A DNA stretch of 64,000 bases from Kudoa neothunni (taxonomy: Eukaryota; Animalia; Cnidaria), in the NCBI GenBank assembly GCA_964304625.1, contig OZ199839.1, positions 1,092,180 to 1,156,179 on the forward strand. Direction: 5' to 3'. A model generated the notes under the pieces. That model did no database searches. It was not told where the DNA came from and saw only the letters and a list, made by a program, of their open reading frames with translations. Below are positions 13,173-39,474 of this stretch, one piece after another. The position numbers and the translations under genes were made by a program. The first letter of the stretch is position 1. Every line of letters starts with the position of its first letter.

Positions 13173-14661
13173 CTATTTGGAACGACGTAAAAATGCATCA
13201 AAGCATTCTTTTTGCGCATTTTCCGCCGAGACTTTAGGATTTTCACTTTGAGTGATCGCTCTTCCAATAATAATTATATCAGCACCATCATCGACAGCCA
13301 TTTGAGGAGTTCTGTATTGTTGTCCAAGTCCATCGGTTTTAGTTGGTGAGGACATTTTTGAATGGGCTGTTGAAGCAAGAGTTACACCAGGGGTATAATG
13401 TACAAAGTCTCCACTAGTATCCAATCTACTTTGGCAGACAAATCCAGACACAAAGTTGGGCCATTTTAACCCCAACTCTAAACAACTTTTTTTAAAACTT
13501 TCATTTAATAGATTTCCTTTGGAACTCATTTCAGCTAACAGTATACAAGCTGTTTCATGGTCTGCCACACGACCATCAAACAAGCCGTCTATTACACTAG
13601 GTCCAGATAAAACATGGGTATTGATCACATCAAAGTATTCGTTTATTTTAAAATGTCGGCATTGGTATTGAAGTTTCACAGTGGCTCCAATGTCAGCAAA
13701 CTTCCGATCTTCGAACAACAAAAAGTTGTATTTCTTAGAAAGAAATCTGAGCGATATCAAAAACTGTTCGTCAAAATTGTCAATCACATCTATGTGAGTC
13801 TTGAGCAAACAAATATGAGGTCCAACCTACAACCAATAACCAAAGGAAACCATCCAAATATTTTACTTGTTCCGCCATTTTCAAAACACTATTAGAGTCA
13901 GTCATATCAACAGCAACACATAGATTAGATTGTTTTTCGAGCATAATCTTCATAAGTTTTTTGTTAAAAATGCAGCCAGTAGATTGTATGCGGTCCTCTA
14001 GTTTGTTGTATGAGGTGTTTATGGGGGTGGACAAAAACTGAAGATCATTAACAACTTGATTATATTTGAAGAAATCCACGCATTGGTCGTAGCATCCTTT
14101 ATCGATAATTTTCATTTCAAAAGCTTTGTTCAGGAAATAATCCACCTTTATCAACGAATAAACTTCAATATTAGCATTCACAAGGTTTTGGTTGCCGCCT
14201 TGCTGTCTATCAAGCAGCACCACCACTCCATTCACCACAATGCCAAGACTACGCAACGCCTTCGCAGTTTCATACACACTCAAACCACTAGTAATCACAT
14301 CCTCAACGATAAGACATTTAAACCCAGGCTCGTACACACCTTCAACCAAATTTCCAGTTCCATATGTTTTGGCTTCTTTCCTTTTCATCAACATTGGTAT
14401 GTCATTCATTGTCGAAATTGTACTTGCGATTGGGAGTGCTGTGAATGGCACCCCACATATACAATCCAATGACTTTGGCTCAATGTTTTTCTCAACTAAT
14501 TTCCACATTTCCTCCGCCACATTACGCAACAAATCTGGGTAGGAAATTATGCATCGGAAATCAAAATATATCGGCGATATTAAACCACTCTTCAATTTAA
14601 ATATTCCAAACTTTATGGCATTCACCTCACACAATCTAGTCAACAGTTCCTCGCTTACCAT
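13173..14661 (-). CDS. UMPS: Bifunctional UMP synthase (OPRT + OMP decarboxylase); exons 14661-13867 and 13826-13173, 482 aa
   Basis: OPRT motifs FKLKSGLISPIYFDFR, RKEAKTYG and LIVEDVITSG. ODC motifs LCVAVD, LKTHID, FEDRKFADIGATV, TPGV, DGLGQQY and IIIGRAI. A 40-nt GT-AG intron (13827-13866) joins MAEQ to VGPHICLLKTH. Confidence 0.97.
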
Positions 14662-16775: not shown

Positions 16776-19700
16776 ATGAGATCAACAATATGTATGATCG
16801 TGGTGGGGGCTATATCGTTATGTAAATATGAATATTTATTAATAGCTGATATCTTTTATAGACACCAATTGTGATTCTACCACAGAAACCCGGCCAACAG
16901 TAGCAACTGAAGCAAAAATGCTCTCCTACCAAATAATAAATGATGATGGTAATACTAAAAAATTAAAACTTACCTTAAGTGGTGCTGATTATGGGGAAAA
17001 CAAGCATTGCCTAATGAAGACGGAAGATAGTGGTCTAACGATGTTCACTGATATAAATTCCGTGTCCTGATACCGACACTGGCTATAGTAGCCAATGTGT
17101 AATTCCTTGCAACAGTGTTACGAATAAATTGGCATATGACAAACTATCTCCAAGAAACAAGTATATTTACGTTTTTGTTGACACCACTGCCCAACTAGCG
17201 GCAGAAGCTGCAGAAGCGGGGAAAATTAATGCTAAAGTTTTTGGATTCCAAATACGTATTTAACATTTTTACTGAGCAGAATTTCATAATCGTTTAGCAT
17301 TACTCGTAAACCCACAGGTCTCAATAACCAAATCAGATACACAGGGATTAAAATTTTCAACAACAACTTGTAATCCAGTAAAATGTCCTATTAAATACAA
17401 GCAAGTAAAATATAAAGACGAGACAGCTAGTTCTAATTGTGCCACTGCTAAAGATATTGATGTCGAATTCGACTTAATGATTCCATATTACGAAATGCAA
17501 TGTGAAAAATATCCAAGTTTCTTTTATAACATGCCAAACGCCTACATGAGAGGGGAAATCGATGTATTCAAACCTCAATATTACGTAGCCTTTAAATCCA
17601 ATACTGAGAAAACTAAATACAAAATTTCGTTTACAAATAATTTCCCTGCGGAAATATGCCGTTTCGGTATTAGAGACGCAACTCCAACACAGAAATCTGC
17701 ATATACGTATATCTGTGGAGCAGAAGGAAAGGAATGCTATGCACCTTGCGATAATGTCGAGTTAACTTTAACAGAAAGCAAGGCAATTGTCGATATTTCA
17801 ATCCAAACTAGACACCATAACATAAAAGCTACGGCTGAAAATTACGATGGATATCAACAAAATAAATTCGGTATGTTAAAGGATGAATGAATATTTTACA
17901 ATTTTATTTAGCAATTATTGAACCAGATGGTGGTATCTTGAAAAATATACAAACTGGTGTCACGTTGAACGCATCTCCTTTTAAATCGGGTGGTTCAACT
18001 CAATTTACCGCTTGCAAAATAAGACACTTCCCTGCTGATAAACCAAGACCAAATGCTAGGACAGTAACAAAAACAAATTGTGCAAATGACTCTCCTTGTT
18101 CAGAAAATTGTGGTAATGAGTTAACATTAAAGGGATTACTTGAAGGAAAACCTATAATGATTGAAATTGAACCTACTGGCATTAATAGTCCAGAAAATTA
18201 TAATGAATATTTATTTTTAAGGACTAGTAAATCACTTTTTTGGAAACTATGGATTATCTATTTGTATTAAGGCCCAAAACAAGACAAAGCTTTTAGAGAC
18301 ACAAATCCAACAGTAACAGAATCAACAATGGAAATAAAAGCATTAGCAGAAGCTGAAGATGCAGCTACAGACCAGCCTACATGTTCCTATTTAATAAGCA
18401 AAACTGAACAAAATAAATTCGTAGATGCTCATTGTATCGATAGCTACCCTTGCCGAGGGCATTGTAAGGAGTCTAAAACCATCATAAACCTGATTCCAGG
18501 ATCAACATACGACATCAAAGTCATTGCACACAAAGAATACGCGACGAAAACGTACACGGGGATAAAAACTAGTATTTCTATTGTCACGATGAATATTTAA
18601 TGATTTTGGTTAGATTTGGCAACTCTTACTCTCACATCAAGTTTCTTGGATAAAGGTTTCAAGGTAGTCGGTACCCTATCTACTCCTGATCCAGATGCAG
18701 AATGTGGATTTAAACTTCAGAGGAAGGATAAAACATTCAAGGAAGTTTTTATTTGCCCTCCACCTCCTAAAACTCCCAAAACAAGCGCTACTTCTACACT
18801 TTTAGAAGAAAAAATAAGTATTAATAATAAAGATTCATCTACTTCTGTTCAAAACGTGGCTCGATTATCTACAATAAATGAAATGAGGATTTTGAGAGCA
18901 GGAACCTCCGCCTCTGAATCATCTAATCCTAAATCACCATCGACAAATACTAACGTTAAATTTCCAGCATGCACACAACCGTATTTATGCAATAACATCG
19001 TCGTGAGCGAGGGTTATGAAGCAGATAAAGAGTATAAATTGTTAGTCACTGCTATAGGAAGATCCGCAGAAACAGTCATATCTATACCTAAAAGTATTAT
19101 TTTTATTACTGTCTTTTTGTTATTTATTCTAAATAATTAATATATTTCATAATTTTAATCATTTAATTCTTTAACATCAAAAATTACTTATTCAGTCATT
19201 TGCATTCTAAACTACTATAATATAGATCCATTATTCGTATCCAATGAGGACGTGAATAAACAAATAGTTGTAGTGATTGTGCGTGACGATAAAACATTAA
19301 AAGTTCAAACTACTCTACCTCAGGGTGTGGATGAAAATTCAAAATGCAAGTGGGAATTAATAAATTGGGATGATGTTGCTAAACCGTCTGTAAAAAAATG
19401 TATGGATGCCGGTCAGGATTGCACTACATTCCCATCTTGTAAGGATATCTCAATTTCGGATGTTGAAGATAGCAACGATTATCGTGTGAGAGTAATTCTT
19501 AGTACCGATGAGAACATTTTTGGAACTGCCATAATAAAAAGAGGTATTTCAAAATTTATAATATTTTTATAATTTTTAAAATTAAAACATAGGAGAGATC
19601 TCAAACAAATCAACGTAATTTCAAACATACATTATAATTTTTAAGTATTTTTTAGATCAAAGAATACAATGTAAACAATATTTAAGATATTTTAATAATT

Positions 19701-19793
19701 TTTCCATTTAGTATTATTGCAGTCGTGGTCCCAGTTGTGATAGCGATTATTGGAATAGGATTCTATTTCGGATATATGAAGAACAAAAATTAA
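16776..19793 (+). CDS. Paralog A: Cys-rich FN3-like repeat type I membrane protein, ~847 aa; exons 16776-16821, 16862-17255, 17298-17870, 17912-18226, 18272-18571, 18614-19093, 19226-19543, 19593-19614, 19656-19670, 19712-19793; one +1 frameshift near 17055
   Basis: Signal peptide MRSTICMIVVGAISLYTNC. Nine GT-AG introns (40, 42, 41, 45, 42, 132, 49, 41, 41 nt) join the ORF-track pieces in frame. FN3-type strand NLIPGSTYDIKVIA. TM IIAVVVPVVIAIIGIGFYFGY followed by MKNKN*. Colinear with paralogs B and C. Confidence 0.85.
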
Positions 19794-20500
19794 ATAAATA
19801 TGATTTTATTAGATGTAGGAGACTACATTTTTTTTATTATATAATTTAAATTAAATTATTCATTGGATATAATCGAGCAATTAATACAATATTATTCGCA
19901 AATATCATTTAACAAAGAATGTGCAATTCCCTTTTCCTGGTTAACGCACATGAAACCTAATGATAATCTATTTTTTTGATATGTATTATTATATTAAAAA
20001 ATATTCATATAATGCTTTTATTATATTTATTCTTATAAACTTTTTGATTGACTATTGAGTCATCACAACATAATCTTTCACAGTAAAACAATTTTTAAAG
20101 TTATTAAATTAAAAAGGTAATGAAATAAATACTAAAATCAGTAGAAGTGATTGCCTTTTAATCATCTAATAAAACATCGTTCACATACATCGACTATATG
20201 GAAATAAAAATTTTAGGTTCTCTCACACATTAACTCATTTTCCAATTTAATTATTTCATAGTTTTTATTATATACATTTTTTCTCAATATATTCAACCTA
20301 TGTAGGATTATCTAGGACATGCTACCGCTCCACTTTCAGAGCTTAATATTAGGAGAATGAAATCTCCAATATGTCACCCACTAGAGCCGCTTACATATCA
20401 AATTAACTTTATATTATTATCTTAGCAGCGCGGTTGTTAATTTAGTAAACGTGTTTCTATGACCGCATTTAATTTAAAAACTTAATCACATGTTATATGT

Positions 20501-20543
20501 CAGGGTTGCCAAAACTTCCAAGAACCACAGTTTGGCCACTCTG
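20501..20543. mobile_element. Minimal 43-bp hAT-type element (ends only)
   Basis: CAGGGTTGCCAAA...TTTGGCCACTCTG (11/13 inverted match), flanked by TTATATGT/TTATATTC (6/8 TSD). The right end resembles that of the MITE at 15276-15592. Confidence 0.55.
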
Positions 20544-21624
20544 TTATATTCAGAGAAAAGAAATTTATCCTGTAATTATGCTAAGTTACCGATACAACCC
20601 AATTCACGATGAGCAGAAAACAAAATTGGTAGAAATTTTAATATCAAAATATACATAAATAACCTTCTTAATTGTTACCAGTAAAAATTAACTTTTCTAT
20701 AATAAAGAATGCCACAAATTGAATAGTGTAAAACAGGCCAGGTAATCATGCTACATTAGATAGAAGGCCAGAATATGTATAAATCCTTTAGTTGTGATTA
20801 ATTTTTGATAGCACGTTTGGAAATTGATTTATTAATTGTATATTTTGATATTTTGTACCTTACACTTACTTTACAACACGAGAAAAATATAAGGAACGTT
20901 AGACATTTCTTGTGAGTAATTAACCAGTTTATATAATTGTTTATCTCAAAATTTATCCGGCTTAATTGATGTTGAATTTTATATTTTATGTTTTTAAATG
21001 ATGGTTCGGAATCGTAAAGAATAATAATTAAACGTTTTCATTTGTCTCACTAAATTATTATCTTCCATTCTGTAAAAACAAGTAGGACATTTTTGGGGGT
21101 AGGGTAATATTTTAATTTTTGTTTTGTTTTTTACACATTTTATTTAAGAAATGAGGATAATATTTAGTTAAATTCGTTTAATTTGTTATTAAGTTTCTTC
21201 ATGTGATATAAATATCGATTATAAGAATAAGGAAAAATATACATGTATTATCTAATACAAAAAATTAACTTAGTCATTAACCCCTCGCATGTCGGATGAG
21301 GAAAGGTCCCAGGAAAATTTTGGTCCCCGAACCGATCGTGGCTAATCACTGGTATAATATGTAAGTTTGAATGGCCCATTTTGTAAAAATCTGAATGGTA
21401 TGATTCTTAAATGCACCTTTTTTCTAATAATTAAGATTTGGGTATAAAAAATGATATAATTAAAACCTAGAATAATAATAATAATAATATGAACTTTATA
21501 ATTTTGTTTAATCAGCGAATAACGATCAAATGAAAAAAATAGTCCCTTTGTTAATAATCTTATCGTAAACTTGGTATAAATTGAAAATAATCTATAAATT
21601 CAAATTTTATTTGATGACTAAGGC

Positions 21625-24600
21625 CTAATTTTTCTTTTTGAAAACCATGAATCCGAATGCACTAACAATCAGAACTCCGGCAGCTGCCAAAACGATTATT
21701 CTAAAATAATTTTATTTGAATCAATCCAAACCTTTTAATCCATACATTATAAGGTTTTTAGAACTAAATAATAGATTATATGATTATTTAATAATAAAAA
21801 ACCTTGAACTGCTTTTTGGCACCTAATAATAATAATAATACCTTAAAGTATCATTAAGTATATCGAGTTTTACCTTGTTCAATTACAGCCTCGCCATAAA
21901 TTGAAGGATTTGTAGAGCTGTAAATAATCAAGTGATAGCTGTTACCGTCTACCACCCTCTTAATAGTAAAAGATTTGCATGATGGGTAAGTTCTGCATCC
22001 AGTACGACTTGGATTCATGCATTGTTTCACTATTGGCATCGACTTGACACTTGAATTACGTAATTCCCATTTACATTTCGAATTATCATTAAGACTAGAT
22101 GGAAGTGTGTTCTCTATATTGAATGACTCACCATCTCTTACTATTGTTATAAATATGGTTTTATCCTTTTCTGTTGGATTTCCTTTTGGAGCCGCTATTT
22201 CATTATGTTAATATTTTATATCGTCGAAAATATGAGTTACTGGCTACTAATGTGATTTCATTTGGTGAAGATTTTTCAACCGCAGTAATCAAAATCTTAT
22301 ATTCTTCTTTCGCATCATAATCATGGAATATAATTGAACTACATAATGGGGGCTTTGCACATGTGTTTGAACTTTGAGGAGCCGCCGTTGTAGTTGTTGT
22401 GTGGGTAGCAGTTTCTACAGCATTATTTGTTGGTACACCTCCAGCTCTCGCTATTTCTGATGTAATAACCATTGATTTATGCATATGAAGTTGAATGATG
22501 TCGGCTTTCAGTTGGCTAAAACTAGGTCTGGATTGACTAGGTATGTTCGTTTGAGTATTAGGGGCCGTCGGGGCAGTTGGTGTCTGGGGACCCTCACATG
22601 TATAAATATTATCAAACTTATTGTTTTTCTTAACTTGGATTGTATAATGACAGATGGCTTCTGGGACTTTTTTTTGACAACTGCGCATTCAACTCCAAAC
22701 CTCGTTCGGTATATTTTGGAGTTATCGTGAGGGTTGACAAATCTATTAGAAAATAATGTATTAATCATCTCAATAGTATACCTGTTAAAACATTTGCATA
22801 AAATATGTTCTCCGTAATCTTTGTCAGCAACAACTTTGATATCATAAGAAGTATTTGGCTCAAGATCAATGATAGTTATTGGTTCTCTACATCTTCCTCT
22901 GCAGGGGTTCGCCTCCGTGCATACAACAGCGTAAAATGTATTTTTTCCTGCTGGGCTTATGTAGTACTCACAGTTTGGTTCATGTTTCTTATTGTTTTCT
23001 GGGTTACCTCCAATAACCTTTAACGTGTGTTCGTTGAATCTGCTTTTTGTTGGGGCTGTTGTTTCGAAGGCTTTATCACTTTTTTTATCTTTATAAAAAT
23101 TATAACTTTGGTTTTGTTATAAATTATTTACTAGTTCTTATAAGTAGTTGTTCCTTCGAAAACTCGGGGGTCATTGATGCCAATAGGTTCAATTTCAATA
23201 ATATAAGGTTTCCCTGCAGATAGGCCCTCTAATCACTAACCTGTTTGCATTCTGTACCACATGTGGCCTTCTCACCATTATTATTGGTGCTACATTCAGG
23301 ACGGCGTAGGTTGACTCGGTTTAATTTTGTCTGCTGCGTAATTTTTTGAGAGCATGCATGAAGAAAAATTTAGTAACGCTGGGTAGCATCCGAGCTAAAT
23401 AATGCTCCATTCAATGATACACCCTCATTTGTAAAGTCGGACAATAATCCTACTTCAGTTTCAGTAATTACTAGAAAAAAAATTGAAATTTTATTACTCA
23501 CCACGTTAATACACAAATTTATTTACTAGAAAAAAAATTGAAATTTTATTACTCACCACGTTAATACCAAATTTATTTTGTTGAAATCCCTCAATATTTG
23601 GGGAGGCAGTTTTTGTAAGATCGTGTTGTTTGGTTTGAATTAAGACCTTTTATATTTCCTTTGCTTCGGTTACGATAAGTTCAGTATCCTTACATAATGT
23701 GTAACATTTTCCATCTGTATTTCCACATTTAGATTCGAATGGCTGACTATTTCCTTCAGTTTTCCCATCTTTAATACTGAAGACACAAATTTCAGACGAT
23801 AGCATTGAACCGGTGAATCTAACTACAACTTTTTTATCGTCCCCTATCTTTGTTGTCAAATAATACTGAGGCTCGTAAATAGAAATATTGTTCTTCATAT
23901 ATGTATTTGGCATATGATAAAAAAAACTGGGATAACTCTTACATCTCATCTCATAATGAGGTATTAACAAATCAAATTCCATAGAAATTGATTTAACTGT
24001 ATCACATGAACCTACTTTTGAACCATCATCGAACTTGGCATCTTTGTAAAAGATTGGGCAATCGACTGGAGTACAAGTTTTTGTTGAAAGCGTAATTTTC
24101 TTATCGCTACCGAGAGATATTGCTACTTGAGGATTTACCAGTAAGGCTAAATATAATTCATTAATCGAGTTTAATTACATATATGTGATTACGTGCAGCC
24201 AAACCAAACACTTTTCCGCCGGTTTTATGCGCAGTTCCTTGAAGATTTTGGGTTGTATCACCAACTTTTACGTAAATGTACTTAGTTCTTGGCGAAAGCA
24301 TGCCATAAGTAACCTGGCTATCTTGCTTGTTACAGTCGATAATGCACTTATTTTGTTGAGAGTCTTCTTTCCCAGGACAACCAGGAATTTCTTTAAATTC
24401 GGTTGATATTGGTGTTTCATTGTTGGCTATAATTTCTGCTTCGTTCGATCTCATTAGAAGACACTTTTTAGGAGCCACATATATTGAGCCACCAAGTGTA
24501 TGTTTGAATAGATAACTTTTAGTGGTAGAAGCAGGTGGAGGAGAAGTAGTAGTAATACTATCATAGACAATTTGGTACGATAATGTAGCTTCTGGTTCTG

Positions 24601-24694
24601 GGCTTGTGGCTTGAGATGCTTGATTCGCACTCACCAACAGTAATGCGTTTAATAAAACTAATATTATTGTAATTAATGGAATCATATTGGGCAT
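21625..24694 (-). CDS. Paralog B of the Cys-rich FN3-like membrane family; disrupted as assembled (in-frame TAA at 23650-23652, many indels ~22650-23400, duplicated intron); pseudogene or local consensus errors
   Basis: Signal peptide MPNMIPLITIILVLLNALLLVSA. Shared motifs LSYQI, LLVNPQV, FDLLIPHYEMRCKSYPSFFY, DLEPNTSYDIKVVA and SKCKWEL. TM IIVLAAAGVLIVSAFGFMVF followed by KKKN*. Confidence 0.75.
23468..23578. repeat. 55-bp tandem duplication spanning an entire 42-nt intron of paralog B
   Basis: Identical intron copies at 23471-23512 and 23526-23567 separated by 13 nt. Confidence 0.9.
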
Positions 24695-27600
24695 TTACTA
24701 AACAAGAAACGAACGGACCAACTTTTCAACATGTTTAATAGTATTATATCAACCAATTATTGATATCTAATAAATGAATGCCATCTCATATATAATCCAT
24801 ACTTTCGTATTCAAAAGTTACCGAATAAAAAACTTTTAACGTTATAAATATATCATGTTTAATTAATAATACAATGACGAATTTACAAACAATTACAATA
24901 GATATAATTGTTTTTACATATTCGTTAATGAAAAAGTTTTATTACAAACTAATTGTAGTTAAACAAAATTAAGAAAATATATCAACATTTTTTCTACAGT
25001 TATATGAACGAAAGTAAAAATTATGACTTAAACAAAACTACCATTAATTTTAATGAGTTACTGAAGGGTTTTAAGTATCACTAGCTCGAATTGACAGCCT
25101 TCTCTCGTGAACGAGATAATCTTGCTTTAAAAAGTTACTTAAAATTTTCAAAAAGTGTATTAATTCTTCTAGGTAACCAATACAACGAATTAAGTTAATT
25201 TCTTAAAGAATCATACCTTTAACGATTGTGATTAGTGAAATAAAAATCATGATCATTTTAAAACATGGTAAAGATATACCAACCATGACCCCAAACCGAC
25301 GTTCAATAATTGAACATCGATGTTACCTTACTTTATATTCCTGAATTTTTATAATTTTTTCGAGAATGTTGTCTGAAAAGTTATTTATTAGTCCCTTTGA
25401 GTGTTTAAGACAGATTTTGGCCTGACAACAAAATTTTATACAACGATGTTTTAAGGAGAACATAAAAAATGCCATGAATTGTGTGTGGATACACAAATCC
25501 TACTAAAATTAATTTTTATTCCTCATATTAATTTCCCGCCATTCGTCAATAACTTTAATACATTAATTCCTAAAAACATTCGCGTAGCCCTTAATATTAT
25601 ATATCAGCCAAAAAACTTTAATAATTAGATAAGGCAAAATTTCAATTTCTGCATTAAACCTTATTCTCGAAAGTTCATTTAAGCGGGAAAAGTAACTATT
25701 TGCATGATAAATAATATTCGGGTGTCATTAGTTTTGCCTATATTTAATTATTTCTGGACCGTCGCTTCACTCTTAGGTATCAAAAATAAGTTAACTTAGT
25801 AGATTCTAAGAAAATAAATCTCTTCATAATTTATGAATAAGAGTTCCAAGGGGAAAAATCTCTATTGTGCAAGTGTACATGCAGTTTAGGATTAAATTTG
25901 ACCGTGTCAATAACTTTTGTCCTTATATTTTTCATCATATGAGTCAATCGGTCAGGTGGATCCATCTCATGTAACTGATGTCTTTCAATAAAGATCTGTC
26001 TTTGATTTTGATGTTATTTTCTAGTTAAAACAAGATTTCTTCTGATGCAAACGAATGAGGTAACGCGAGTAAAGACAACATTTATTTTGATAGTAATGAA
26101 TACTTAAATGTTTCTCTTCTTTTATTCTAGGCCGCGTACCAAGAATTCATTGGTTTTCTTCAATGAAATAACCATTAAATAATTTCAGGCTAAATTCTCA
26201 TCACTCAAGATCCTTATTTAAGTACTCGTCTTTAGCAATAATATTTGTAAATCTCTTTGAGAAGGATACGATACACGGAGTTTTCCCTACTTGACGTCTG
26301 CAGGATCTATCGTTTCAAGCAATTTTAAATTTACGGACGTATCGTTGGTCAAGACCAAATAAATACCAGTTTCGCCAATTTCACTTAGAAATCCAATGTT
26401 TAGGTATTAAAGTGAACAAGACCTTGAGTGCTTATTATGGTAGCATTTTGATTACAAATGGATTCAATTTTTGGCCAAAAATAAACTCATGTAGAGAAAT
26501 ATACTTTGATATGTCTTTAATATTTATACTTCATAGAATGTTATTTTTTATAAGCTCTCTTCTCAAAAAATAATTAAGTATCAACTAAACATTACTTAAA
26601 GACGGAATTCATAGTTTATAAACTCTAAAAATCTCAGCTTGAAATTAAACGTAGATTCTATTGGACATGCGTGTATAGAATTTAAATAATCATAGTATAT
26701 TTCACTTTAGATTTTGAGGGAGACTGCTATATTGTGCAACAGAGATATATCTTTTGAGATTCGACGTCGAATAATCTTTTTAACTCATTATATTTATTTT
26801 GATGTTTTGAATTATTTGAAACAATGAGTGGACTCTTCGCGCTAAGTCTTCTAACTCATTAGGAAATCGCTGGCATGCTTTGATACACATAAATTTATAA
26901 GGTAGCGTAAGCCTGGACGTAAAGTGATGAAACTATTCGCTTCAACGAATATTTTTACCTCTTTCTCTACGCACCGTCACACTTGCATTATCGCTGACAA
27001 ACTCTGTTAGTTTGTATAGGAATTTGGTGCTTTTCAAAAAAAAAAAAAAAGAATAAATAATTCCATCAGCATTATCATCAATAATCTCCACAGGGCGAGT
27101 AGTTTATCAACAGTTCACTAATTATTATATTCATAGTATCTAGCTAATAAAAAATTTGTTTGTATGTCAATATATCGCTGGCTTTTTTTTGCATAATTAG
27201 ACCGAATGTTTGGGTCGGTAATGTTGAAAATGGCTCATTTAACTGGTACATTCCGATATTATAACGAATAATTTTTTCACTTTTTGTTCGAGCACATTTA
27301 ATCCCCTTAAAGTTGATAGAATCTTCACCAAACTTGGCAATAAAGTCGGGTAGATGATCCAGAATTGATGTGGGTAACTTGTGCTCAGCATTCAAATACA
27401 CATAATTTCAATTCGTCGGTGACTCTCCACCTATTGCTTAAATAAGAGCTGTCAATTTCCTCAAAACTAATTATTTTGAGAGAATAATTTGGAAATCTAA
27501 TTTTCTGACGAAACTTTTCTTGTTTAGTATATCTTTCGCCTGGTAAGATACTACAAAAAAATTTTCCACTGCATAATTTACTGGATGCCCTAATCTTGTT

Positions 27601-30438
27601 CACCATACTAACATCAATCCACACGAAAATTCTTTCAATGATTCATCCAACGTTTCTCGGTTTACGTTCATACGTTTTGTTTGTTTTCTCAACGGTTGTC
27701 ATTTTGTCAATGTCAATATCGATATTACTTCTTTCGGCATTCATTCAAATTATTTTATCCGAATAAACAAAAAGATCGAAAAATTTGTGGAATCCCATTT
27801 TATTTCACATTCATCATAACTCAACTTAATCGATTATACAAGTCACGACATTTTGTTGTCTTATATAGCTGCAATTACTGTCGACATCATGAGACAATTA
27901 TTTCCATAAAATTATTATAATCTCATTAGTTGATTAGGTAACATGAATTTATAACAATTCTATATCGAAACTCATTGACCTTTAAACGTACCAATCCATT
28001 TACTTAGGGCAAAATGTACTAAATCTGGCAACCCTGAGCTACTTTATAATTTATAAATTACAATACAAAAATTTTAGCACATGTGCTCGTTGTATCCTAT
28101 AGTTGGAAGTTACGAAGCATTCCACATTTTAATGAAAAATACCCTTATCCAATTTATTTATGTGCAGAAAATAATTTATAAATCGGTTCCTCTCAGTTTA
28201 GATATTCTTATAATGTCCGATAGTGATTATTCTATAAACTAAGAGTTTGATTTCGCATTGCATCAAACAATTTTATTTAACGTTAACAAAGGATTAAACT
28301 ATTAGCTGTGTAACTTATCACATATCCAAAACAGCAACTAATAGATTTGTTCATTTACTAAGTTCAGTCAACATCCAAGTGATTTTTTAGAACCAGACGA
28401 CCATATTGAATAGAAGAATTTTTTAATATGTATTACAAATTGAAACATCATTGAATAAAAGGTGTTAAAGAAGTTCTGAAACAATAATTATCATTCGTCA
28501 TGTTTCGACGGACATCGTTATTTCAAGATGGAAAGCGTTGACGATGCTGTGTTGATTCTATTGCTCAATCTGATACTCGTATTATCGAAATCTGTGATGG
28601 AAAAATTTGTATAGGATTTTCTCAATGAATTTTAAGAACTGAGATTTCTAGATTCATAAAATATTTCAAACAAAGTTATCCAAAAGGAAGCAGCTGGCTG
28701 ATGAAACTCTAAAGGAGTTGTTCACTAGTAGAGATCAAATAGATTCTAGAGTGAAATTGTAAACTTCACAAAATTTCTAATGTTGAATGTAGGGGAATTT
28801 TGTTGAGTACGCCAAATTATCTCGACAAATCAACAAACACAACGATATATTAAGTGAAGATTTGAAATATTATAGAACATCACAATCTAGCTATATACTA
28901 AATTTGACTCAGATATTCACCGTTTTAGATGTACGCTTATTATTAACGACCACCTTAATTGCCAAATTAATAATACTTTGATTTAGGGAATTCTGTTTTT
29001 TTTTGTTGTATAGAAATTATGCTTCGAAACCTGTTTTCACATTCTCCGATAGTTATAAATCGTTTGATTTTCTACATTTTGTTGTAAGCTACCCCAATAC
29101 CAAATATACAAGTAAAATTACTTGATTGATTCTTGTATTGATTGTGTATATTAGATACTGTTGGATTTCCCTTTTGGTATTTTTCGTCAAGATTGTTCAC
29201 CTCTAAGATAATGAAGTTGATAGTCCATCAAATAACCATCTAAAGTCTATGTCGACTAATTTAGTGTCCTATTATATGTGGCTGTATTATTTTTTAATAT
29301 AAAAATTCAATTCACTGTAAAATGTAGTTATTATAATTATGTGTGGGTTGTTTTTTTATTTGCTTGTCTTAAACAGAAAGGTAATGGAAATTTTTATAAA
29401 TTACGCTTGTGTCATTGCCAATCACTTTCAAATTTTCCGAATTTTATCAAAAAATTTGCTTAATAAACTAATGTTGTAAATTATATGATTATTGTCTACG
29501 GTAAAATCTATCGTCTATCATGTCATTTTTATATTTATTCCGTAATTCGTATATCTTAATTTATTGTCGGTATGGTTTTAATTCTAATGACTCTAAAAAT
29601 GTTATTTTTAGAATATAAATTTTAATTCATAAGTTTAAAATAAAATCCGTTTGATCATGTTAATAATCCAACATACATGGTTAGTTTTTAAATGCCCGTA
29701 AATATCATTCAAATTAGATTTCTATTCTTTGCCGTGGGGGAATATTGAAAGCAGTAGTATGATTTCCACGCAATATCAATATAAGTTATTTTATTGATTA
29801 AAATGGTATTTATATTCCATTATTATAGATTTAATATAATAAATTAAAAATTATTTTATTTAAAGTATATTTGGGGGTAGACCATAATTGATTATTTGTT
29901 GGTTTTATGCCACTTGTTATTAATTGGCATAAAAAATATTGAAAAATAAAATGTATTTTGTGATAATATCGAATAAACCAAGCTATTAATTATAGGAAAA
30001 TTGCTTATTTATTAAGGTCAATTTTAATATTTTATTAAAAAAATATTTTTCTTATTTTAACATTTGATTTTTCCTATAATCTAATGGATCCCATACTTTA
30101 GAATTGACAATAGATTGTTTCAGGTACACAAAACCTGTTGAACTTTATCTAAAATATTAACTTATATAACAATTTTATAAAATGATCAACGTCAAGGTAA
30201 CCATATATACTCTTTTTTTATCGTAAATATTTGAGTTAGTATTATGATGTTGAATAAATTTCATGTTGGATTTCCTTCTGGTTACAAAGAATGCATCTAA
30301 TTTCCGTAATATTCCTTTAAATTAATATTCAGGGTAAGAAATTACTATCCATCAAAATATTTGTTAAGAGGAATTAATATTTCCGAAATATTTGTATTGA
30401 TGCTTCATTGGGTTTTAGGCGAATATTAATTCTGAGTG

Positions 30439-30464
30439 TATATATATATATATATATATATATA
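30439..30464. repeat. (TA)n microsatellite ~75 bp upstream of the paralog C start codon
   Basis: Read directly. Confidence 0.9.
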
Positions 30465-30538
30465 TGAATTATAATCCGATCAAATTTTTGATTTTCATAT
30501 TGAACGGCAACAATCGTCTATTTCTTTGGCAAAATATA

Positions 30539-33438
30539 ATGAAAGATTTGATCTATCTTTTGGGAGTTTGTACTTTACTGTCATGTATATACCAAATTTC
30601 AAAAGAAATATTAATAATAACTTATAGCCCGCTTTTTTCTTATATACACTCAAGGAAGTCAAGATGTTCAAAATCCAGTTACTACTGAAAACTCTTTAAG
30701 TTACAAACTTACGAGAGAGATAAATGAATTGAATATTAATTTGAAATTAAGTGGAACCGATTATACTGAGGGTAAAAATTGCCACATTAAACAATCCAAC
30801 AAAGATGTTACAAACTTTGATGAAATCACTGTATGCTCTGGTAATGTTTATGCAACAGAACCTAGAAAATGTGTTCATGTATGCTCAGGAAGTACCAATA
30901 AACTAACTTTTGACAAGTCTTCTTCAAGCGCGAAGTACATCGCCGTTTTTTCAGATAATATCGCAGAAACCGCTGCAAATAAAAATAAAGGTGGAGCTGT
31001 ATTTGGATTAGAGTTGCGTAACTAAACCATCTAATACTTTCAGTAAGTTTCTTTTAGTATTATTGGTCAATCCGCAAGTTACAATAACGAAAACCGGCCA
31101 AAAACTGAAATTGGGTACAAAAACTTGTAAACCGGTAAATTGTCCTATATTTTACAAGGATGTGAAATATAATGATGGAACAGCTGGTCAAAATTGTGCT
31201 GCAAATATTGAAAGTGAATTGGAGTTTAATTTGATGATACCACATTATGAAATGAAATGCGAGAACTATCCCAGTTTCTTTTACAACCTGCAAAATAAAT
31301 ACACTCTATCAACATTTGATGTTTATCGCCCACAGTATTACGTAACCCCTAGTTCGAGTGGAACAACGAAGTATATGATAAAGTTTACAAATAAATTTCC
31401 CTTCGAAATTTGTCGTTTCAATGTAAGAGAAGTGTTAGAAGACAATAGTAATAATGACTACACATCAAAGTGTGGTTTGGCAGATAAATGTCATGCTCCA
31501 TGTAATAATGTTGAACTTGAACTCACTACTTCTAAGTCTGTTGTTGAAATATTGATCCAAACCAGGCACGTATCGTTGGATAAAAGTGGCTCCGCATACG
31601 AAGGATATATTCAAAAAAAATTTGGTAGTTCATAAACGGGTTAAATTTGGTAATCTTCTCATAGTTGTTAAGGAAACTGATGATTCTATCTTATTGTCAG
31701 AACACTCCTCTGCTGGTGTCAAGCTAAATGTTCCGCTGTTTACTCAAGAAGAAGAACCTAAATTTTCCAGGTGTACCGCAACTTATTATGAAGCAGATAA
31801 ACCTAAACCTGATTCACCTGGAACGCCAAAGTGTGAAAAAAACAATGCGGGATGTGAACCAGTATGCACTGAGGCTCTAAAGATTATAGAGCTTAATAGT
31901 GGAAAACCATATATTCTTGAAATTGCATCAGGCAATAGCAATGGTGTTCTTAAAGAATTTAAAGAGCATATATTCTTTCGTACAGGTAATATAATGTAAT
32001 ATAATATAAAAAAATTAATGTATAGACAAAAAATCTGAGCCTACCTTTTCTGAAACAAACCCAACAGTGACGGATACAACTGTATCAATTAGAGCAATAG
32101 ATAATAGCGGAACACTTGGCGCAAAAGAAAAGACTTGTGCTTACTATATAAGCCCTCATGGAAAGGACGTGTATGTGTGTGCAATGTGCGAAGATAGTTA
32201 TCCGTGCAGGGGTTTTTGTAAGGATTCTCAAAAAATTATAGGACTAATGCCTGAAACTGAGTATGACCTAAAGGTTGTCGCCCATGAGGAATATGGCGAA
32301 AAAATCCACAAAATTACAACAAGTATATAAGTAATTGATCTTGAATTATATAACTAATTTTGTTTCAAGCTTTGTCAACGCTTACACTACGATCAGAATT
32401 TATAGAAAAAGGATTCAAGGTGACAGGGGTACTGTCAACACCATATCCTGCAGCCGTTTGTCACTATAAAGTAAATGTAAAGAAAGGGAACGAATCCAAA
32501 TTGGTCTATGAATGCCCGCCACTGGCTTCTACAACAAACACTGGAGCAACCATTACTGCATCTAAACCTTCTAAAATAGCGATAGCTAGATCAAATAATG
32601 GACAACAACCACAAGATGCACTATCATCAAATAAAAAAACCGAAATCACTCCATGCACACAACCACCATTATGCACTGATATAATATTCAAAGAAGGATA
32701 TGAAGCAGACAAGGAATATGAAGTTTTAATTACGGCCGTCGGTAGATCCGTAGAAACTATCATCAAAATACCCATAAGTAATAAAGCGCCTAATTATAAA
32801 TTAATATATTTCTTAATTAAATTAAATTATTAAGAATATGTGCATTAATTCTTATTAATCGATTTTCTAATTTAGATCCACAGTTCACCCTCACTAAGAA
32901 CCCAATCAGATTAACTGTGGCGTTTGCAAGAGAAGGCGACAACATAAAAGTTAAAACTTCTCTTCCTAAAGACGTTGATGAAAGGTTGTTATGCAAATGG
33001 GAATTGAAAAATTGGGATGATCCATCCAAACCAATCGTCCAAAAATGCATGGCAATTGGTGAGCAAGGTTGTTCAGCTTTTCCATCATGCAAGGAATTTA
33101 CAATTACAAATGTGGATAACACCAACAATTATCGTTTGATGTTATATCATAATGCAGATAGCAATATCACTGGTTTTGTCGAAATCCAGAAAGGTAATTG
33201 TATAAATATTATTGGTCGATATTTCTGGTTTTTGATTAGATGATGAATCAAACAAATCCATGTAAAATTAAATTGTTGATTTATTTTTGATTTATTTTAG
33301 GTCAAAAAATACAATGTACTAATTTATGGAAATATCTTCTTAATCAATTATTTTAGAATTATTGCTGTAGTAGTTCCAGTCCTCATCATCGTTGTGGGTG
33401 CGGGATTCTATTTCGGATATTGGAAAAATAAAAATTAA
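30539..33438 (+). CDS. Paralog C: intact Cys-rich FN3-like repeat type I membrane protein, 821 aa; exons 30539-30584, 30628-31017, 31058-31624, 31665-31985, 32026-32322, 32370-32777, 32876-33193, 33240-33261, 33301-33315, 33357-33438
   Basis: Exons sum to 2466 nt with no stop. Signal peptide MKDLIYLLGVCTLLSSRFFLIYTQG. FN3-type strand GLMPETEYDLKVVA. TM IIAVVVPVLIIVVGAGFYFGY followed by WKNKN*. Intron positions are identical to paralog A. Confidence 0.9.
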
Positions 33439-37603: not shown

Positions 37604-39474
37604 ATGATTGCAACCTTGCCATTATTGTTACTATCTGGTACATTACGTGATAATTTGGGATATATTCAATATAAAATTTTGTAGTAACATGCATTACATC
37701 AAACGTCCCCCGATTTCTTGATCCAACATTTAAGACTAAAAATGGTCTTACACTAGAGGATAATAATAATCTTGAACAAGTGCATAATATCAAATGTACT
37801 CAAAACACTAACGCGCCATTTGACCGATACAATCCAGATAACTATAATATTAATAAAAATGAATATAGTTATTGTAGGACTGAAAAGTTATTGGATGAAA
37901 CAAGAGGAAAGATGGTCAACACTGATGCTGCGTTTCCAAGAGGTGTAAGCCAATTCACTACGATAGAGTCAACATTTAAATTTCTGAAAAATTCAAAATT
38001 TGTTACTGAAAAATTTCCAATTCTCAGAAATGTACTGAATGAATATTATGGCCAATTGGACAAATTAACAAGCGACGTTTCCATTTGCAAAAATTCCTTT
38101 AGAACGTTAAGAAATGAAAATAGAGATTTAGATTTGAAATTAATCAACGTGAAACAACTGCATAAAAATGTGGAAACAGATAAACGTCTCCTCGCGAAAA
38201 TATTGTCTTCCATCAGGTCCTCTATGGAAGTGTGTAGGGGGAGTCCACAAAATAACATAACCGTCTACAAAGATATTGTGAGCAGTTATGACTTACAGGA
38301 AAATTTAGATCATGTATATAAGTCTTTGACTAATACTATAAAAATGATAAGAAATACATGTGATAAAGCTGCAAACGTTCCCACGTTGAACTCAGTTGTT
38401 CCCACGACATTAAAAAAATATGAAACTATTATTCGACACCTTAACGGCGTTCACAATACCATAGAAGCAGAAATCAGAAGTTTGACACTAGAAAGACAAA
38501 GATATTCAATTTTAAATGAAGATATGCAGATTCCATTGTCGAATATAGAAGCAAGTTTTAATCTAATGAAAACACGGTTAGAATCTGTTGATCATTTCCA
38601 CGTTTGGATGGAAAAAGAAAATAAAATAATCGAACAGTTGATCAGCAAAATATCTCTACAACTTCCAAAATTAGCCACTGACAGCCAAGATTTGCTTCAA
38701 ATAACCATCACATCAATAAGGAGACATATGGAAAGACAAGGAACTATGGAAAAGAATACGAAAAACTTTGATGATTCGGTGAGACAGATTGAAACCTTGC
38801 TTCGGGATATTTCATCGAATCATGCTGCAATGCTTCAAAGGACGCAAGTTAACAAGAAAAATATAGAATTGACCATTGAAGTACTTGAAGTTATTAAAGA
38901 CATGGAAGTCAAGCTCTCTTATGATAATACATATCATAGTTTGCTAAAATTATCGGAATATTTGAAATCTCCATGGAACTATTCATTAGACAGAGAATCT
39001 TCAACCATCTCCGAGCATCTGGAAAAAATCCAAAAATTGAAGGGCCAACTTAACTTACTCTCGAGCCACATCCAAAGTCATCATGTCGACGTCCACTTAT
39101 ATTCACACAATTTGAATCATCATGTGAAAAAATTGGAGAACCAATTCAACTCCCATAAAGATATAACAATACCTGAAATAGACATCATTAAGAGTATGCC
39201 TGAAATAGAAGATACTTTGGACGAAATAATTGGTCCAAATGATATAATATTCCAAGAGGTTACAACAAAAAAGGTCACTAGACAAGATCAGACTTCTTCC
39301 ACCCCAACGGTATTAGCTAGTGATGGTACGGGTCGAACCATTTGGGCTTTGCTGTGTAGTTTGGTTGTTGTGTTAGCATTAGTATTGATGGTTGTTTTGG
39401 GCTTTGTTTATCAAAAAACAAGAAACCAACCTAGAGCATTTGAAAGACGTAACAACGAGTTTGATGATATATAA
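37604..39474 (+). CDS. Secreted-type long helical/coiled-coil type I membrane protein, 607 aa; exons 37604-37637 and 37685-39474
   Basis: A 47-nt phase-1 GT-AG intron extends the 564-aa ORF to a signal peptide MIATLPLLLLSVTCITS. Heptad-like Leu/Ile periodicity, a Thr/Ser linker, TM IWALLCSLVVVLALVLMVVLGFVY and a 20-aa tail. Confidence 0.88.

What the first reader, a model, noticed from the sequence alone, without database searches (positions are those of the whole stretch)
16776..33438. Three-member family of receptor/adhesin-like surface proteins built from a repeated 4-cysteine FN3-like module
Seen: after splicing ~40-nt introns, the ORF fragments at 16.8-19.8, 21.6-24.7 and 30.5-33.4 kb form three colinear ~820-850 aa proteins (signal peptide, ~7 modules of ~100 aa, TM, tiny tail). 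Each module has four Cys, in most modules spaced C-x(~13-20)-C-x(n)-C-x(3-5)-C. In A these are HCLMK..PCPD..QCVIPC, EICRF..ICG..ECYAPC, TACKI..NC..PCSENC, TCSY..HC..PCRGHC and KCKW..KC..DCTTFPSC; module 2 is spaced differently. Most modules end in an FN3-style strand pair (LIPGSTYDIKVIA, LMPETEYDLKVVA, LEPNTSYDIKVVA, YEADKEYEVLITA). Established: L.P.T.Y.V.V.A is the FN3 E-F strand signature, and typical FN3 repeats lack a repeated 4-Cys pattern. Inference: a lineage-specific, rapidly diverging cell-surface family (host adhesion, antigen or receptor) that I cannot assign to a known family. This is the best candidate for an undescribed system here.
Basis: partly seen in the sequence, partly recalled or inferred. 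Interest (0 to 1): 0.82.

Follow-up and report, generated by a model that had tools for sequence, protein, structure and literature searches.

The report
Huge FN3-like surface family in Kudoa
The three genes are real, but they are three members (one intact, one frameshifted, one decayed) of an undescribed family of about 200 or more single-pass membrane proteins, each a chain of seven disulfide-stapled fibronectin-III-like modules, in the fish-muscle parasite Kudoa neothunni, where nothing is yet known about the molecules at the host interface.

Summary
Gene C (30539-33438, +) splices through nine GT..AG introns (39-47 nt, one of 98) into an 821-aa protein: signal peptide, seven modules with four invariant Cys each, transmembrane helix, tail KNKN.

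Corrections:
- Gene A has one +1 frameshift in exon 2.
- Gene B is a decayed pseudogene.
- The family is not three-membered. Exon 3 has at least 150 scored copies (481 candidates) on all three chromosomes. Its YPSF[FY]Y motif occurs 208 times against 19 for the control.
- A, B and C lie in three deep clades.

FN3-likeness is supported. The AlphaFold2 model of module 5 (pLDDT 86.7) matches FN3 domains at Z 8.6-9.3. Modules 1-3 match tandem FN3 arrays. Pfam fn3 hits stay below threshold, and exon 3 matches nothing in Pfam or among PDB sequences.

dN/dS is below 1 in every exon; modules 1 and 4 evolve fastest.

Outside this genome, 1.84 billion representative proteins gave 18 unnamed ORF fragments.

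The assembly statistics and the (TAAACC)n telomere match Kudoa neothunni (Myxozoa). I found no paper describing the family.

Best reading: a lineage-specific, diversifying surface family at the host interface. Expression could not be tested. First-stage readers flagged what looks like the same family in 29 other notes on this genome.

The parts
30539..33438 (+). Gene C, intact: 10 exons, 821 aa, 30 Cys, stop TAA at 33436-33438
   Evidence: the CDS is 2466 nt and divisible by 3, with a single terminal stop. All nine introns are GT..AG (43, 40, 40, 40, 47, 98, 46, 39, 41 nt).
30539..30584 (+). C exon 1: start codon and most of the signal peptide
   Evidence: A phase-1 intron sits at the same place in gene A.
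30628..31017 (+). C exon 2: module 1 (membrane-distal, fast-evolving; invariant Cys C51, C69, C81, C85 of the exon)
   Evidence: Alignment A3. dN/dS 0.35-0.70 against the five closest paralogs, 0.18-0.70 over all nine. AF2 of the homologous part of paralog L016 gives pLDDT 67-85, all-beta.
31058..31624 (+). C exon 3: modules 2 and 3, the family's most conserved part (8 Cys; PHYEMxC, YPSFFY, PQYY, EICxF, CxAPC and IQTRHH motifs)
   Evidence: Alignment A1. At least 150 genomic copies. AF2 pLDDT 85-95. Foldseek and VIA-align match two-domain FN3 or cytokine-receptor modules. No Pfam or PDB sequence match.
31665..31985 (+). C exon 4: module 4 (fast-evolving; Cys C36, C56, C63, C67)
   Evidence: Alignment A4. 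hhalign to module 5 gives Prob 81%, E 1e-5. Titin FN3 at E 0.015. dN/dS 0.30-0.68.
32026..32322 (+). C exon 5: module 5, the clearest FN3 (TCAYYISP..C..C..PCRGxC..L.P.TEYDLKVVA)
   Evidence: Alignment A5. AF2 pLDDT 86.7, pTM 0.78. FN3 matches: Foldseek TM 0.55-0.65, VIA Z 8.6-9.3. The profile finds titin and fibronectin FN3. 14 of 23 members hit PF00041 below threshold.
32370..32777 (+). C exon 6: module 6, with a length-variable Ser/Thr/Pro-rich insert between C2 and C3 and an invariant Arg inside it
   Evidence: Alignment A6. The insert is 46 aa in C and 71 aa in A, with 39-42% S+T+P.
32876..33193 (+). C exon 7: module 7 (Cys C39, C57, C65, C71; CKWEL motif)
   Evidence: Alignment A7. This is the region of highest nucleotide identity among close paralogs, 83-94%.
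33240..33315 (+). C micro-exons 8 (33240-33261, 22 nt) and 9 (33301-33315, 15 nt): short stalk (..DESNKS-M-SKNT-I..)
   Evidence: The same two micro-exons occur in gene A, with identical phases and the same SKNT peptide.
33357..33438 (+). C exon 10: transmembrane helix plus tail KNKN and stop
   Evidence: All 25 paralogs examined end in a 20-25 aa hydrophobic stretch (mostly 21-22) plus a basic tail of 4-5 aa.
16776..19793 (+). Gene A: same 10-exon structure (exons 16776-16821, 16862-17255, 17298-17870, 17912-18226, 18272-18571, 18614-19093, 19226-19543, 19593-19614, 19656-19670, 19712-19793), about 847 aa if read through
   Evidence: all introns are GT..AG (40-49 nt, one of 132) and the CDS is 2545 nt = 3n+1.
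17057..17067 (+). Gene A defect: one extra base relative to paralogs, shifting the frame in exon 2, with a stop (TGA) at 17068-17070
   Evidence: Overlapping frames. DNA alignment to the nearest paralogs L015 and L072. The rest of the CDS is open in the shifted frame. This is either a recent pseudogene or an assembly indel.
21600..24694 (-). Gene B: decayed pseudogene of the same family (start codon at 24694; the end coordinate is approximate)
   Evidence: In-frame TAA at 23650-23652. Tandem duplication of the intron-3 region near 23480-23560. Stop at about 23370-23372 and frame changes in exon 4. A 20-nt instead of 22-nt micro-exon.

Best explanation
These are members of a very large, lineage-specific family of type I membrane proteins of the myxozoan Kudoa neothunni.

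Shown: each protein has a signal peptide and a rod of seven FN3-like beta-sandwich modules, each carrying four invariant Cys. A short stalk encoded by two micro-exons follows, then one transmembrane helix and a basic tail of 4-5 residues. The genes are under purifying selection. Modules 2-3 and 5 are conserved, the membrane-distal module 1 and module 4 evolve fastest, and module 6 carries a length-variable Ser/Thr/Pro-rich loop.

Inferred: the four Cys form two disulfides per module. The ectodomain projects from the parasite's plasma membrane. The tail is too short to signal. The repertoire serves as a diversified host-interface coat (adhesion and/or immune evasion), with the conserved modules 2-3 acting as a common scaffold or partner-binding unit and the variable modules and the probably O-glycosylated loop giving member-specific surfaces.

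In this window, gene C is functional, gene A is recently broken or mis-assembled, and gene B is dead.
For: - Gene structure and an intact ORF for C.
- The same ten-exon structure in A, and the six large exons colinear in 25 paralogs, 24 of them stop-free.
- Four invariant Cys per module.
- TM plus basic tail in 25 of 25 paralogs.
- FN3 fold: module 5 AF2 pLDDT 86.7, VIA Z 8.6-9.3 against FN3 domains; modules 1-3 against tandem FN3 arrays at Foldseek E 1e-4 and VIA Z 6-7; profile hits to titin and fibronectin FN3; 14-17 of 23 members give sub-threshold fn3 hits.
- Family size: at least 150 scored copies, 481 candidates; motif 208 against 19 for the control.
- dN/dS 0.13-0.73, highest in exons 2 and 4.
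- Mosaic identity along close paralogs, highest at the 3' end.
- Variable S/T/P-rich insert in module 6.
- Only 18 unnamed fragments outside this genome. Two of their contigs (L040, L041) keep most of the exon order: L040 lacks a detected exon 6, and L041 ends in exon 6.
- Organism: the assembly statistics and the single (TAAACC)n chromosome end match PMC12239612.
Against:
- No exon shows dN/dS above 1. These are averages over whole exons, so positive selection at single sites is untested.
- The copies are spread in clusters along all chromosomes rather than confined to subtelomeres.
- The most conserved part (exon 3) argues for a common function, which would also fit a role inside the parasite.
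- Kudoa plasmodia grow inside muscle fibres (my own knowledge), where antibody pressure is weak.
Confidence: 0.6

Rival explanations
1. Parasite-internal recognition or adhesion family. The FN3 rods mediate contacts between the parasite's own cells (primary, secondary and sporogonic cells; valve, capsulogenic and sporoplasm cells) or build spore surface structures, not host interaction.
For: FN3 arrays on single-pass proteins are typical animal cell-adhesion molecules; the fold matches include contactin, neogenin, DCC, Dscam and NCAM. Modules 2-3 are strongly conserved. All exons are under purifying selection.
Against: About 200 or more paralogs, with fast-evolving distal modules and pseudogenes, is far more than a body plan of a few cell types would seem to need. 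A tail of 4-5 residues has no cytoskeletal or signalling link.
Confidence: 0.2
2. Host-ligand receptors or decoys. The ectodomains act like cytokine-receptor-type binding modules that capture host factors.
For: Modules 2-3 align as a pair with cytokine-receptor homology modules (IL-6R alpha, leptin receptor CRH2, IL-11R alpha, TSLPR, IL-10R1) at Z 6-7. Disulfide-bearing FN3 domains are a feature of those receptors (my own knowledge).
Against: Z below 8 is within the range of a merely common arrangement (note). No WSxWS motif is seen in the exon translations of C or the consensus lines of the per-exon alignments. The Cys spacing differs. There is no signalling tail. Tandem fibronectin and tenascin FN3 pairs score equally.
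Confidence: 0.08
3. Mostly non-functional repeat. The copies are decaying relics, or sequence carried by a mobile element, and the apparent genes are not expressed proteins.
For: Two of the three window copies are damaged. The published genome is 45.6% repeats (PMC12239612). The published annotation, built on protein hints, may have missed the family.
Against: Of the 150 best exon 3 copies, 148 have no stop. 24 of 25 paralogs keep the six large exons open and colinear. dN/dS is well below 1. Cys and splice sites are invariant, and the AF2 folds are confident. Identity between close paralogs falls from about 70-90% in the first few hundred bases outside the gene to about 40-70% further out; terminal repeats were not searched for.
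Confidence: 0.04

Closest known systems
Fibronectin type III domain arrays of animal cell-surface proteins (Pfam PF00041 fn3; contactins, neogenin/DCC, Dscam, titin, fibronectin)
   Same: Same fold for module 5 (Z 8.6-9.3, rmsd 2.2-3.6 A over 81-90 of 98 residues). Tandem beta-sandwich arrays for modules 1-3. The E-F strand signature with a conserved Tyr is present. Domain-bounding phase-1 introns and type I membrane topology are shared.
   Different: No module reaches the Pfam gathering score (best E 8e-4). Every module carries four invariant Cys. Modules 2-3 have no detectable sequence relative in Pfam or among PDB sequences. There are no Ig or other partner domains. The cytoplasmic tail is 4-5 aa. 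The family has hundreds of copies.
Class I/II cytokine receptor homology modules (gp130, IL-6R alpha, leptin receptor, IFNAR1, tissue factor)
   Same: Pairs of FN3-like domains containing conserved disulfides. Modules 2-3 superpose as a pair at Z 6-7, and Foldseek gives E 1e-4.
   Different: There is no WSxWS motif, the Cys spacing differs, and there is no Box1/Box2 tail. The scores are no better than for plain tandem FN3. Resemblance of fold only.
Variant surface protein families of parasites (Giardia VSP; the VSP-like, RIFIN/STEVOR-like genes reported in the myxozoan Sphaerospora molnari, bioRxiv 10.64898/2026.02.11.705288)
   Same: Signal peptide, variable Cys-bearing ectodomain, one TM helix, a very short conserved basic tail, a hundred or more paralogs in clusters, and pseudogenes. 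One reported case is in a myxozoan.
   Different: There are no CXXC motifs. Cys content is about 3.7% (30 of 821), below the 5-10% criterion quoted in that preprint. The fold is FN3, not the VSP fold. Mutually exclusive expression is untested. The copies are not confined to chromosome ends.
6-Cys (s48/45) domain proteins of Apicomplexa, including PfCSS
   Same: Repeated beta-sandwich modules of about 100-120 aa with 4-6 Cys on parasite surfaces. The module 5 profile gives weak hits to PfCSS chains (E 0.04-0.085).
   Different: The hits are not significant, and no s48/45 Pfam match was found. The listed fold matches are FN3 domains, apart from one bacterial sensor domain, and none is s48/45. 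The organism is a different kind (a cnidarian).

Membership tests
FN3 fold (fibronectin type III-like beta-sandwich) | A seven-stranded beta-sandwich of about 90-100 residues that superposes on solved FN3 domains over most of its length | tested here: met
   Module 5 of gene C: AF2 pLDDT 86.7. 227 of 995 chains score Z >= 8; the best are Z 9.3-8.6, rmsd 2.2-3.6 A, 81-90 of 98 residues aligned, and all are FN3. Module 3 matches single FN3 domains at Z 6-6.7.
FN3 fold (fibronectin type III-like beta-sandwich) | All seven modules adopt the fold | tested here: inconclusive
   Modules 1-3 were modelled on paralog L016 (pLDDT 67-95) and match tandem FN3 arrays. Module 2 also matches Ig-like domains. 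Module 4 is linked to module 5 by hhalign (Prob 81%). Modules 6 and 7 are linked only by weak in-register matches (E 0.002-0.04) and the shared Cys pattern.
Pfam PF00041 fn3 (sequence family) | A score at or above the Pfam gathering threshold | tested here: not met
   The PF00041 scores seen are 15.2 bits against a cut-off of 25 and a best E of 8e-4. 14 of 23 module-5 sequences hit fn3 and 17 of 23 hit FN3_DSCAM-DSCAML_C, all below threshold. Other modules give no fn3 hit.
Pfam PF00041 fn3 (sequence family) | Conserved Tyr of the F strand and hydrophobic E-F pattern (L.P.T.Y.V.V.A) | tested here: met
   In module 5, L73, P75, Y79 and D80 are invariant. Analogous Y and L positions are invariant in modules 4, 6 and 7.
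Class I cytokine receptor homology module | WSxWS motif in the membrane-proximal FN3, and Box1/Box2 in the cytoplasmic tail | tested here: not met
   No WSxWS is seen in the exon translations of C or the consensus lines of the per-exon alignments. The cytoplasmic tail is 4-5 residues in 25 of 25 paralogs.
Giardia-type VSP | [quoted passage not shown] | tested here: not met
   30 Cys in 821 aa (3.7%), spaced C-x3-6-C and not as CXXC. Only the TM helix plus short basic tail resembles VSPs. Criteria as quoted in bioRxiv 10.64898/2026.02.11.705288.
6-Cys s48/45 domain family | A match to the s48/45 sequence family or fold | tested here: not met
   No such Pfam hit. Only E 0.04-0.085 to PfCSS chains. 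The fold matches are FN3.
Variant surface antigen system (functional class) | A large paralog repertoire with pseudogenes | tested here: met
   At least 150 scored copies, 481 candidates; 208 against 19 motif hits. Gene B and L060 are disrupted and gene A is frameshifted.
Variant surface antigen system (functional class) | Surface exposure, and mutually exclusive or switching expression | not testable with these tools
No transcript or protein data were reachable.
Variant surface antigen system (functional class) | Diversifying selection on exposed parts | tested here: inconclusive
   Whole-exon dN/dS is highest in modules 1 and 4 (0.3-0.7) but stays below 1. Site-wise tests were not run.

The most novel reading that the evidence does not exclude
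The family is the repertoire of an antigenic- or phenotypic-variation system in an animal parasite that is itself an animal: about 200 or more FN3-rod coat genes, of which each Kudoa plasmodium or clone expresses one or a few. Switching, and segmental gene conversion (suggested by the mosaic identity along close paralogs), would then generate new surfaces. That would be a VSG/VSP-like strategy built independently from the metazoan FN3 module.
Probability: 0.2. Interest if true: 0.85.

Novelty: new variant of a known kind. Interest (0 to 1): 0.62.

Why it matters
Myxozoans are economically important fish parasites. According to the myxozoan papers read here, their genomes are full of orphan genes and the molecular basis of antigenic variation was unknown until very recently; no Kudoa surface or host-interface protein family turned up in the literature searches.

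This family may be the largest gene family of K. neothunni. If most of the roughly 190 or more copies are intact, that is several per cent of the 5,316 annotated proteins. It is easy to miss, because no module passes a Pfam threshold and the published annotation relied on protein hints and repeat masking.

It gives concrete candidates for surface antigens, for diagnostics and for tests of immune evasion. It is also an example of the animal FN3 module being turned into a massively expanded parasite surface repertoire. The conserved modules 2-3 offer one handle (an antibody or a probe) for the whole family.

Tried and rejected
- **Word-index protein search** with a 445-aa multi-module ORF found nothing. 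The length window excludes full-length proteins of about 830 aa, so this says little.
- **ESM Atlas**, by features and by shape, gave nothing usable.
- **JGI metagenome scan** with the exon 3 profile gave no relative.
- **Rfam** on the window gave nothing.
- **Multi-exon protein alignments** (A2, A8-A12) were discarded. MAFFT stacked the homologous modules on each other. This is itself a sign of repeat homology, but the alignments were useless as AF2 input.
- **Apparent intron-less fused ORFs** in paralogs (L013, L016) proved to be in-frame, stop-free introns read through, not intron loss. The AF2 target L016:4347-5393 therefore contains one junk linker, modelled at pLDDT below 50.
- **Organism guesses rejected:** a rhabditid nematode (no SL1), and Intoshia or any other annotated relative (the neighbouring UMP synthase is at most 45% identical to any named protein).
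B's coordinates come and are approximate.
- **Spliced models:** the joined translation of a spliced model was never sent to any search or fold tool. All searches and folds were done exon by exon, by reference. Joined CDSs were built inside scripts to check length, phase and stops; one search also printed the translation of a first-pass joined model of gene C.

Full report
**What is in the sequence**

The window is AT-rich (about 30% GC) and holds eukaryotic genes with very short introns. Stop-free segments on the + strand at 16.8-19.8 kb and 30.5-33.4 kb, and on the - strand at 24.7-21.6 kb, are colinear paralogs.

For gene C I placed every junction by hand from the sequence and from conservation between A and C, then checked the result in a script.
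- It has ten exons and nine GT..AG introns of 43, 40, 40, 40, 47, 98, 46, 39 and 41 nt.
- The CDS is 2466 nt and encodes 821 aa with 30 Cys and one terminal stop.
- In both A and C the introns that bound modules are phase 1.
- Two micro-exons (22 and 15 nt) lie between module 7 and the transmembrane exon. They give the same SKNT peptide in A and C.

Gene A has the same ten-exon structure, but its joined CDS is 2545 nt (3n+1). One extra base near 17057-17067 shifts the frame in exon 2, and a stop follows two codons later. Everything downstream is open in the shifted frame. This is either a very recent pseudogene or an assembly indel.

Gene B is clearly dead:
- an in-frame TAA at 23650-23652;
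- a tandem duplication around intron 3;
- a stop and frame changes in exon 4;
- a 20-nt instead of 22-nt micro-exon.

**The modules**

I aligned each exon separately, always by reference, from 22-26 paralogs (A1 and A3-A7). Every module has exactly four invariant or nearly invariant Cys.

| Module | Exon | Cys positions in the exon |
|---|---|---|
| 1 | 2 | 51, 69, 81, 85 |
| 2 | 3, first half | 22, 27, 45, 66 |
| 3 | 3, second half | 117, 137, 143, 147 |
| 4 | 4 | 36, 56, 63, 67 |
| 5 | 5 | 37, 54, 60, 64 |
| 6 | 6 | 30, 48, 95, 101 |
| 7 | 7 | 39, 57, 65, 71 |

- In module 6 a length-variable insert lies between C2 and C3. It is 46 aa in C and 71 aa in A, is 39-42% Ser+Thr+Pro, and contains one invariant Arg.
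- Profile-profile comparison links modules 4 and 5 (Prob 81%, E 1e-5).
- Other module pairs give only weak but in-register matches (E 0.002-0.04).
- MAFFT repeatedly stacked different modules on each other by their Cys and E-F strands.

I read this as an old internal repeat whose sequence signal has mostly faded.

**Fold**

AlphaFold2 on the module 5 alignment of gene C gave mean pLDDT 86.7 and pTM 0.78, all-beta.
- Foldseek's listed matches are FN3 domains apart from one bacterial sensor domain, at TM 0.55-0.65.
- The second look with VIA-align gives Z 8.6-9.3 and rmsd 2.2-3.6 A over 81-90 of 98 residues. The matches include fibronectin ED-B, adnectins and monobodies, IFNAR1, contactins, neogenin, DCC and tenascin.

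A second model covers modules 1-3 of paralog L016. That ORF reads through one in-frame intron, which was modelled as a low-confidence linker.
- pLDDT is 85-95 for modules 2-3 and 67-85 for module 1.
- Foldseek matches tandem FN3 arrays at E about 1e-4 (fibronectin, gp130 D4-D6, IFNAR1, IL-17RA, common gamma chain, complement MG domains).
- VIA-align gives Z 6-7, either for the pair 2-3 against cytokine-receptor homology modules and tenascin or fibronectin pairs, or for module 3 alone against single FN3 domains.
- Z below 8 is only moderate evidence.

At the sequence level:
- The module 5 profile finds titin, fibronectin, contactin and Dscam FN3 (E 7e-7 to 0.05).
- Module 4 finds titin (0.015).
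- 14-17 of 23 module-5 sequences hit fn3-type Pfam models, all below the gathering score.
- Exon 3 finds nothing in Pfam or among PDB sequences.

**Family size and structure**

Exon 3 of gene C finds at least 150 scored copies (481 first-look candidates) at 45-78% identity on all three large contigs, usually in tandem clusters. Of these 150, 148 have no internal stop.

A degenerate DNA pattern for the YPSF[FY]Y motif occurs 208 times, against 19 for the reversed control.

In 25 paralogs fetched whole:
- the six large exons are colinear, and 24 are stop-free;
- all 25 end in a hydrophobic stretch of about 21-22 aa plus a basic tail of 4-5 residues such as KNKN, KKKN or RNKN.

A tree of 72 exon 3 sequences puts A, B and C in three deep clades:
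- A sits with copies at C1:12.31 Mb;
- B sits with C2:9.19 Mb;
- C sits with C2:1.38, 7.14 and 8.6 Mb.

The window therefore does not hold a local three-gene family.

First-stage readers noted what looks like the same family in 29 other notes on this genome. Several of their places coincide with my own hits, for example C2:7.98-8.03 and 8.14-8.19 Mb.

**Selection**

Nei-Gojobori dN/dS of gene C against nine paralogs, exon by exon, is below 1 everywhere (0.13-0.73).
- It is lowest in exons 3 and 5 (0.13-0.32).
- It is highest in exons 2 and 4 (0.18-0.70, and 0.35-0.70 among the five closest pairs).

Nucleotide identity along close paralogs is mosaic. It is 62-77% in exons 2 and 4 and 83-94% from exon 7 to the stop. 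About 150 nt upstream of the ATG are also conserved. This pattern fits differential constraint, possibly with gene conversion at the 3' end. These are real, constrained genes, not repeat debris.

**Relatives elsewhere**

The exon 3 profile, searched against 1.84 billion representative proteins, found 18 hits.
- All are unnamed ORF fragments of 106-398 aa from Logan assemblies (SRR31175926, SRR33849685) and ENA metagenome assemblies, including ERZ28624939.
- One of them looks, by eye, about three-quarters identical to gene A.
- Two of the contigs keep most of the exon order at 17-29% GC. One holds exons 2-5 and 7; the other holds exons 2-6 up to its end.

The family therefore exists in a few other AT-rich organisms, most likely other myxozoans, but not in any annotated proteome.

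**Organism**

The genome has contigs of 17.15, 12.04 and 11.05 Mb plus one of 18.2 kb. These features match the Kudoa neothunni assembly of Weber, Paulini and Blaxter (PMC12239612):

| Feature | This genome | Published assembly |
|---|---|---|
| Span | 40.26 Mb | 40.2 Mb |
| N50 | second-largest contig 12.04 Mb | 12.0 Mb |
| Structure | three large contigs plus one of 18.2 kb | three chromosomes plus a circular mitochondrial genome |
| GC | about 30% (window) | 30.4% |
| Intron length | mostly 39-49 nt in genes A and C | 49 nt |
| Telomere repeat | (TAAACC)n only at the right end of C2 | (TAAACC)n at one chromosome end |

- The 18.2-kb contig showed no tRNA in its first 10 kb, and its size falls in the 15.9-19.4 kb reported for Kudoa mitochondrial genomes.
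- The neighbouring UMP synthase is at most 45% identical to any named protein, as expected for this fast-evolving lineage.
- That annotation predicted only 5,316 proteins from protein hints, so the family may be largely unannotated.
- I found no paper linking Kudoa or Myxozoa with such a family.
- The nearest literature is a 2026 preprint reporting VSP-like and RIFIN/STEVOR-like membrane families in Sphaerospora molnari. Those differ in Cys content, motifs and fold.

**Interpretation**

Shown:
- a type I membrane architecture;
- seven FN3-like modules with four invariant Cys each;
- a tiny tail;
- a very large, constrained but diversifying repertoire.

Inferred:
- two disulfides per module, giving a stiff extracellular rod;
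- display on the parasite surface;
- probable O-glycosylation of the module 6 loop;
- a role at the host interface (adhesion and/or immune evasion).

In this reading the conserved modules 2-3 form the common core, and modules 1 and 4 are the member-specific faces.

Rivals are a parasite-internal adhesion or recognition role, host-factor capture, and a mostly dead repeat. The last is poorly supported.

Limits:
- All searches and folds were done exon by exon, by reference.

Noticed in passing
window 13173-14661 (-): A UMP synthase gene (OPRTase plus OMP decarboxylase) in two long ORFs. The best named relatives are only about 45% identical (Daphnia, plants), which shows how fast this lineage evolves.
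   Followed up: partly
L013:3797-5131, L016:4308-5411 and other paralogs: In many family members single introns are multiples of 3 (39 or 42 nt) and free of stops, so exons 2+3, 3+4, 5+6 or 6+7 read through as one ORF with a linker of 13-14 aa. This may matter given the frequent intron retention reported for Myxozoa (PMC12239612).
   Followed up: partly
G000:C2:12039536-12040069: (TAAACC)n telomere-like repeat, with 85 overlapping matches at the right end of contig 2 only. The other five chromosome ends show none.
   Followed up: yes
window 37780-39474 (+): A single-exon ORF of 564 aa, probably coiled-coil, with a C-terminal transmembrane helix and a short acidic tail. No Pfam family reaches threshold.
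   Followed up: partly
window 46561-47490 (+): A homologue of the AAR2 splicing factor in two adjacent ORFs (AAR2 N-terminal domain E 6e-17; C-terminal region at threshold).
   Followed up: partly
window 54135-57298 (+): A run of long coiled-coil-like ORFs in the same orientation, probably exons of one large structural protein. Only weak Pfam hints.
   Followed up: no
window 30630-32321 (exons 2-5 of gene C): No N-x-S/T sequon in 521 residues of an Asn-rich protein, and only 3 in all 821 aa. This may be depletion of N-glycosylation sites; I did not test it across the family.
   Followed up: no
window about 30440-30465: A (TA)n microsatellite about 75-100 nt upstream of gene C's start codon. 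The last 150 nt before the ATG are 80-87% identical among the three closest paralogs, which suggests a shared promoter.
   Followed up: no
window 27144-27624 (-): Two overlapping ORFs of about 80 aa in the 5.6-kb gap between genes B and C, with no Pfam match. Possibly a decayed mobile-element remnant.
   Followed up: partly
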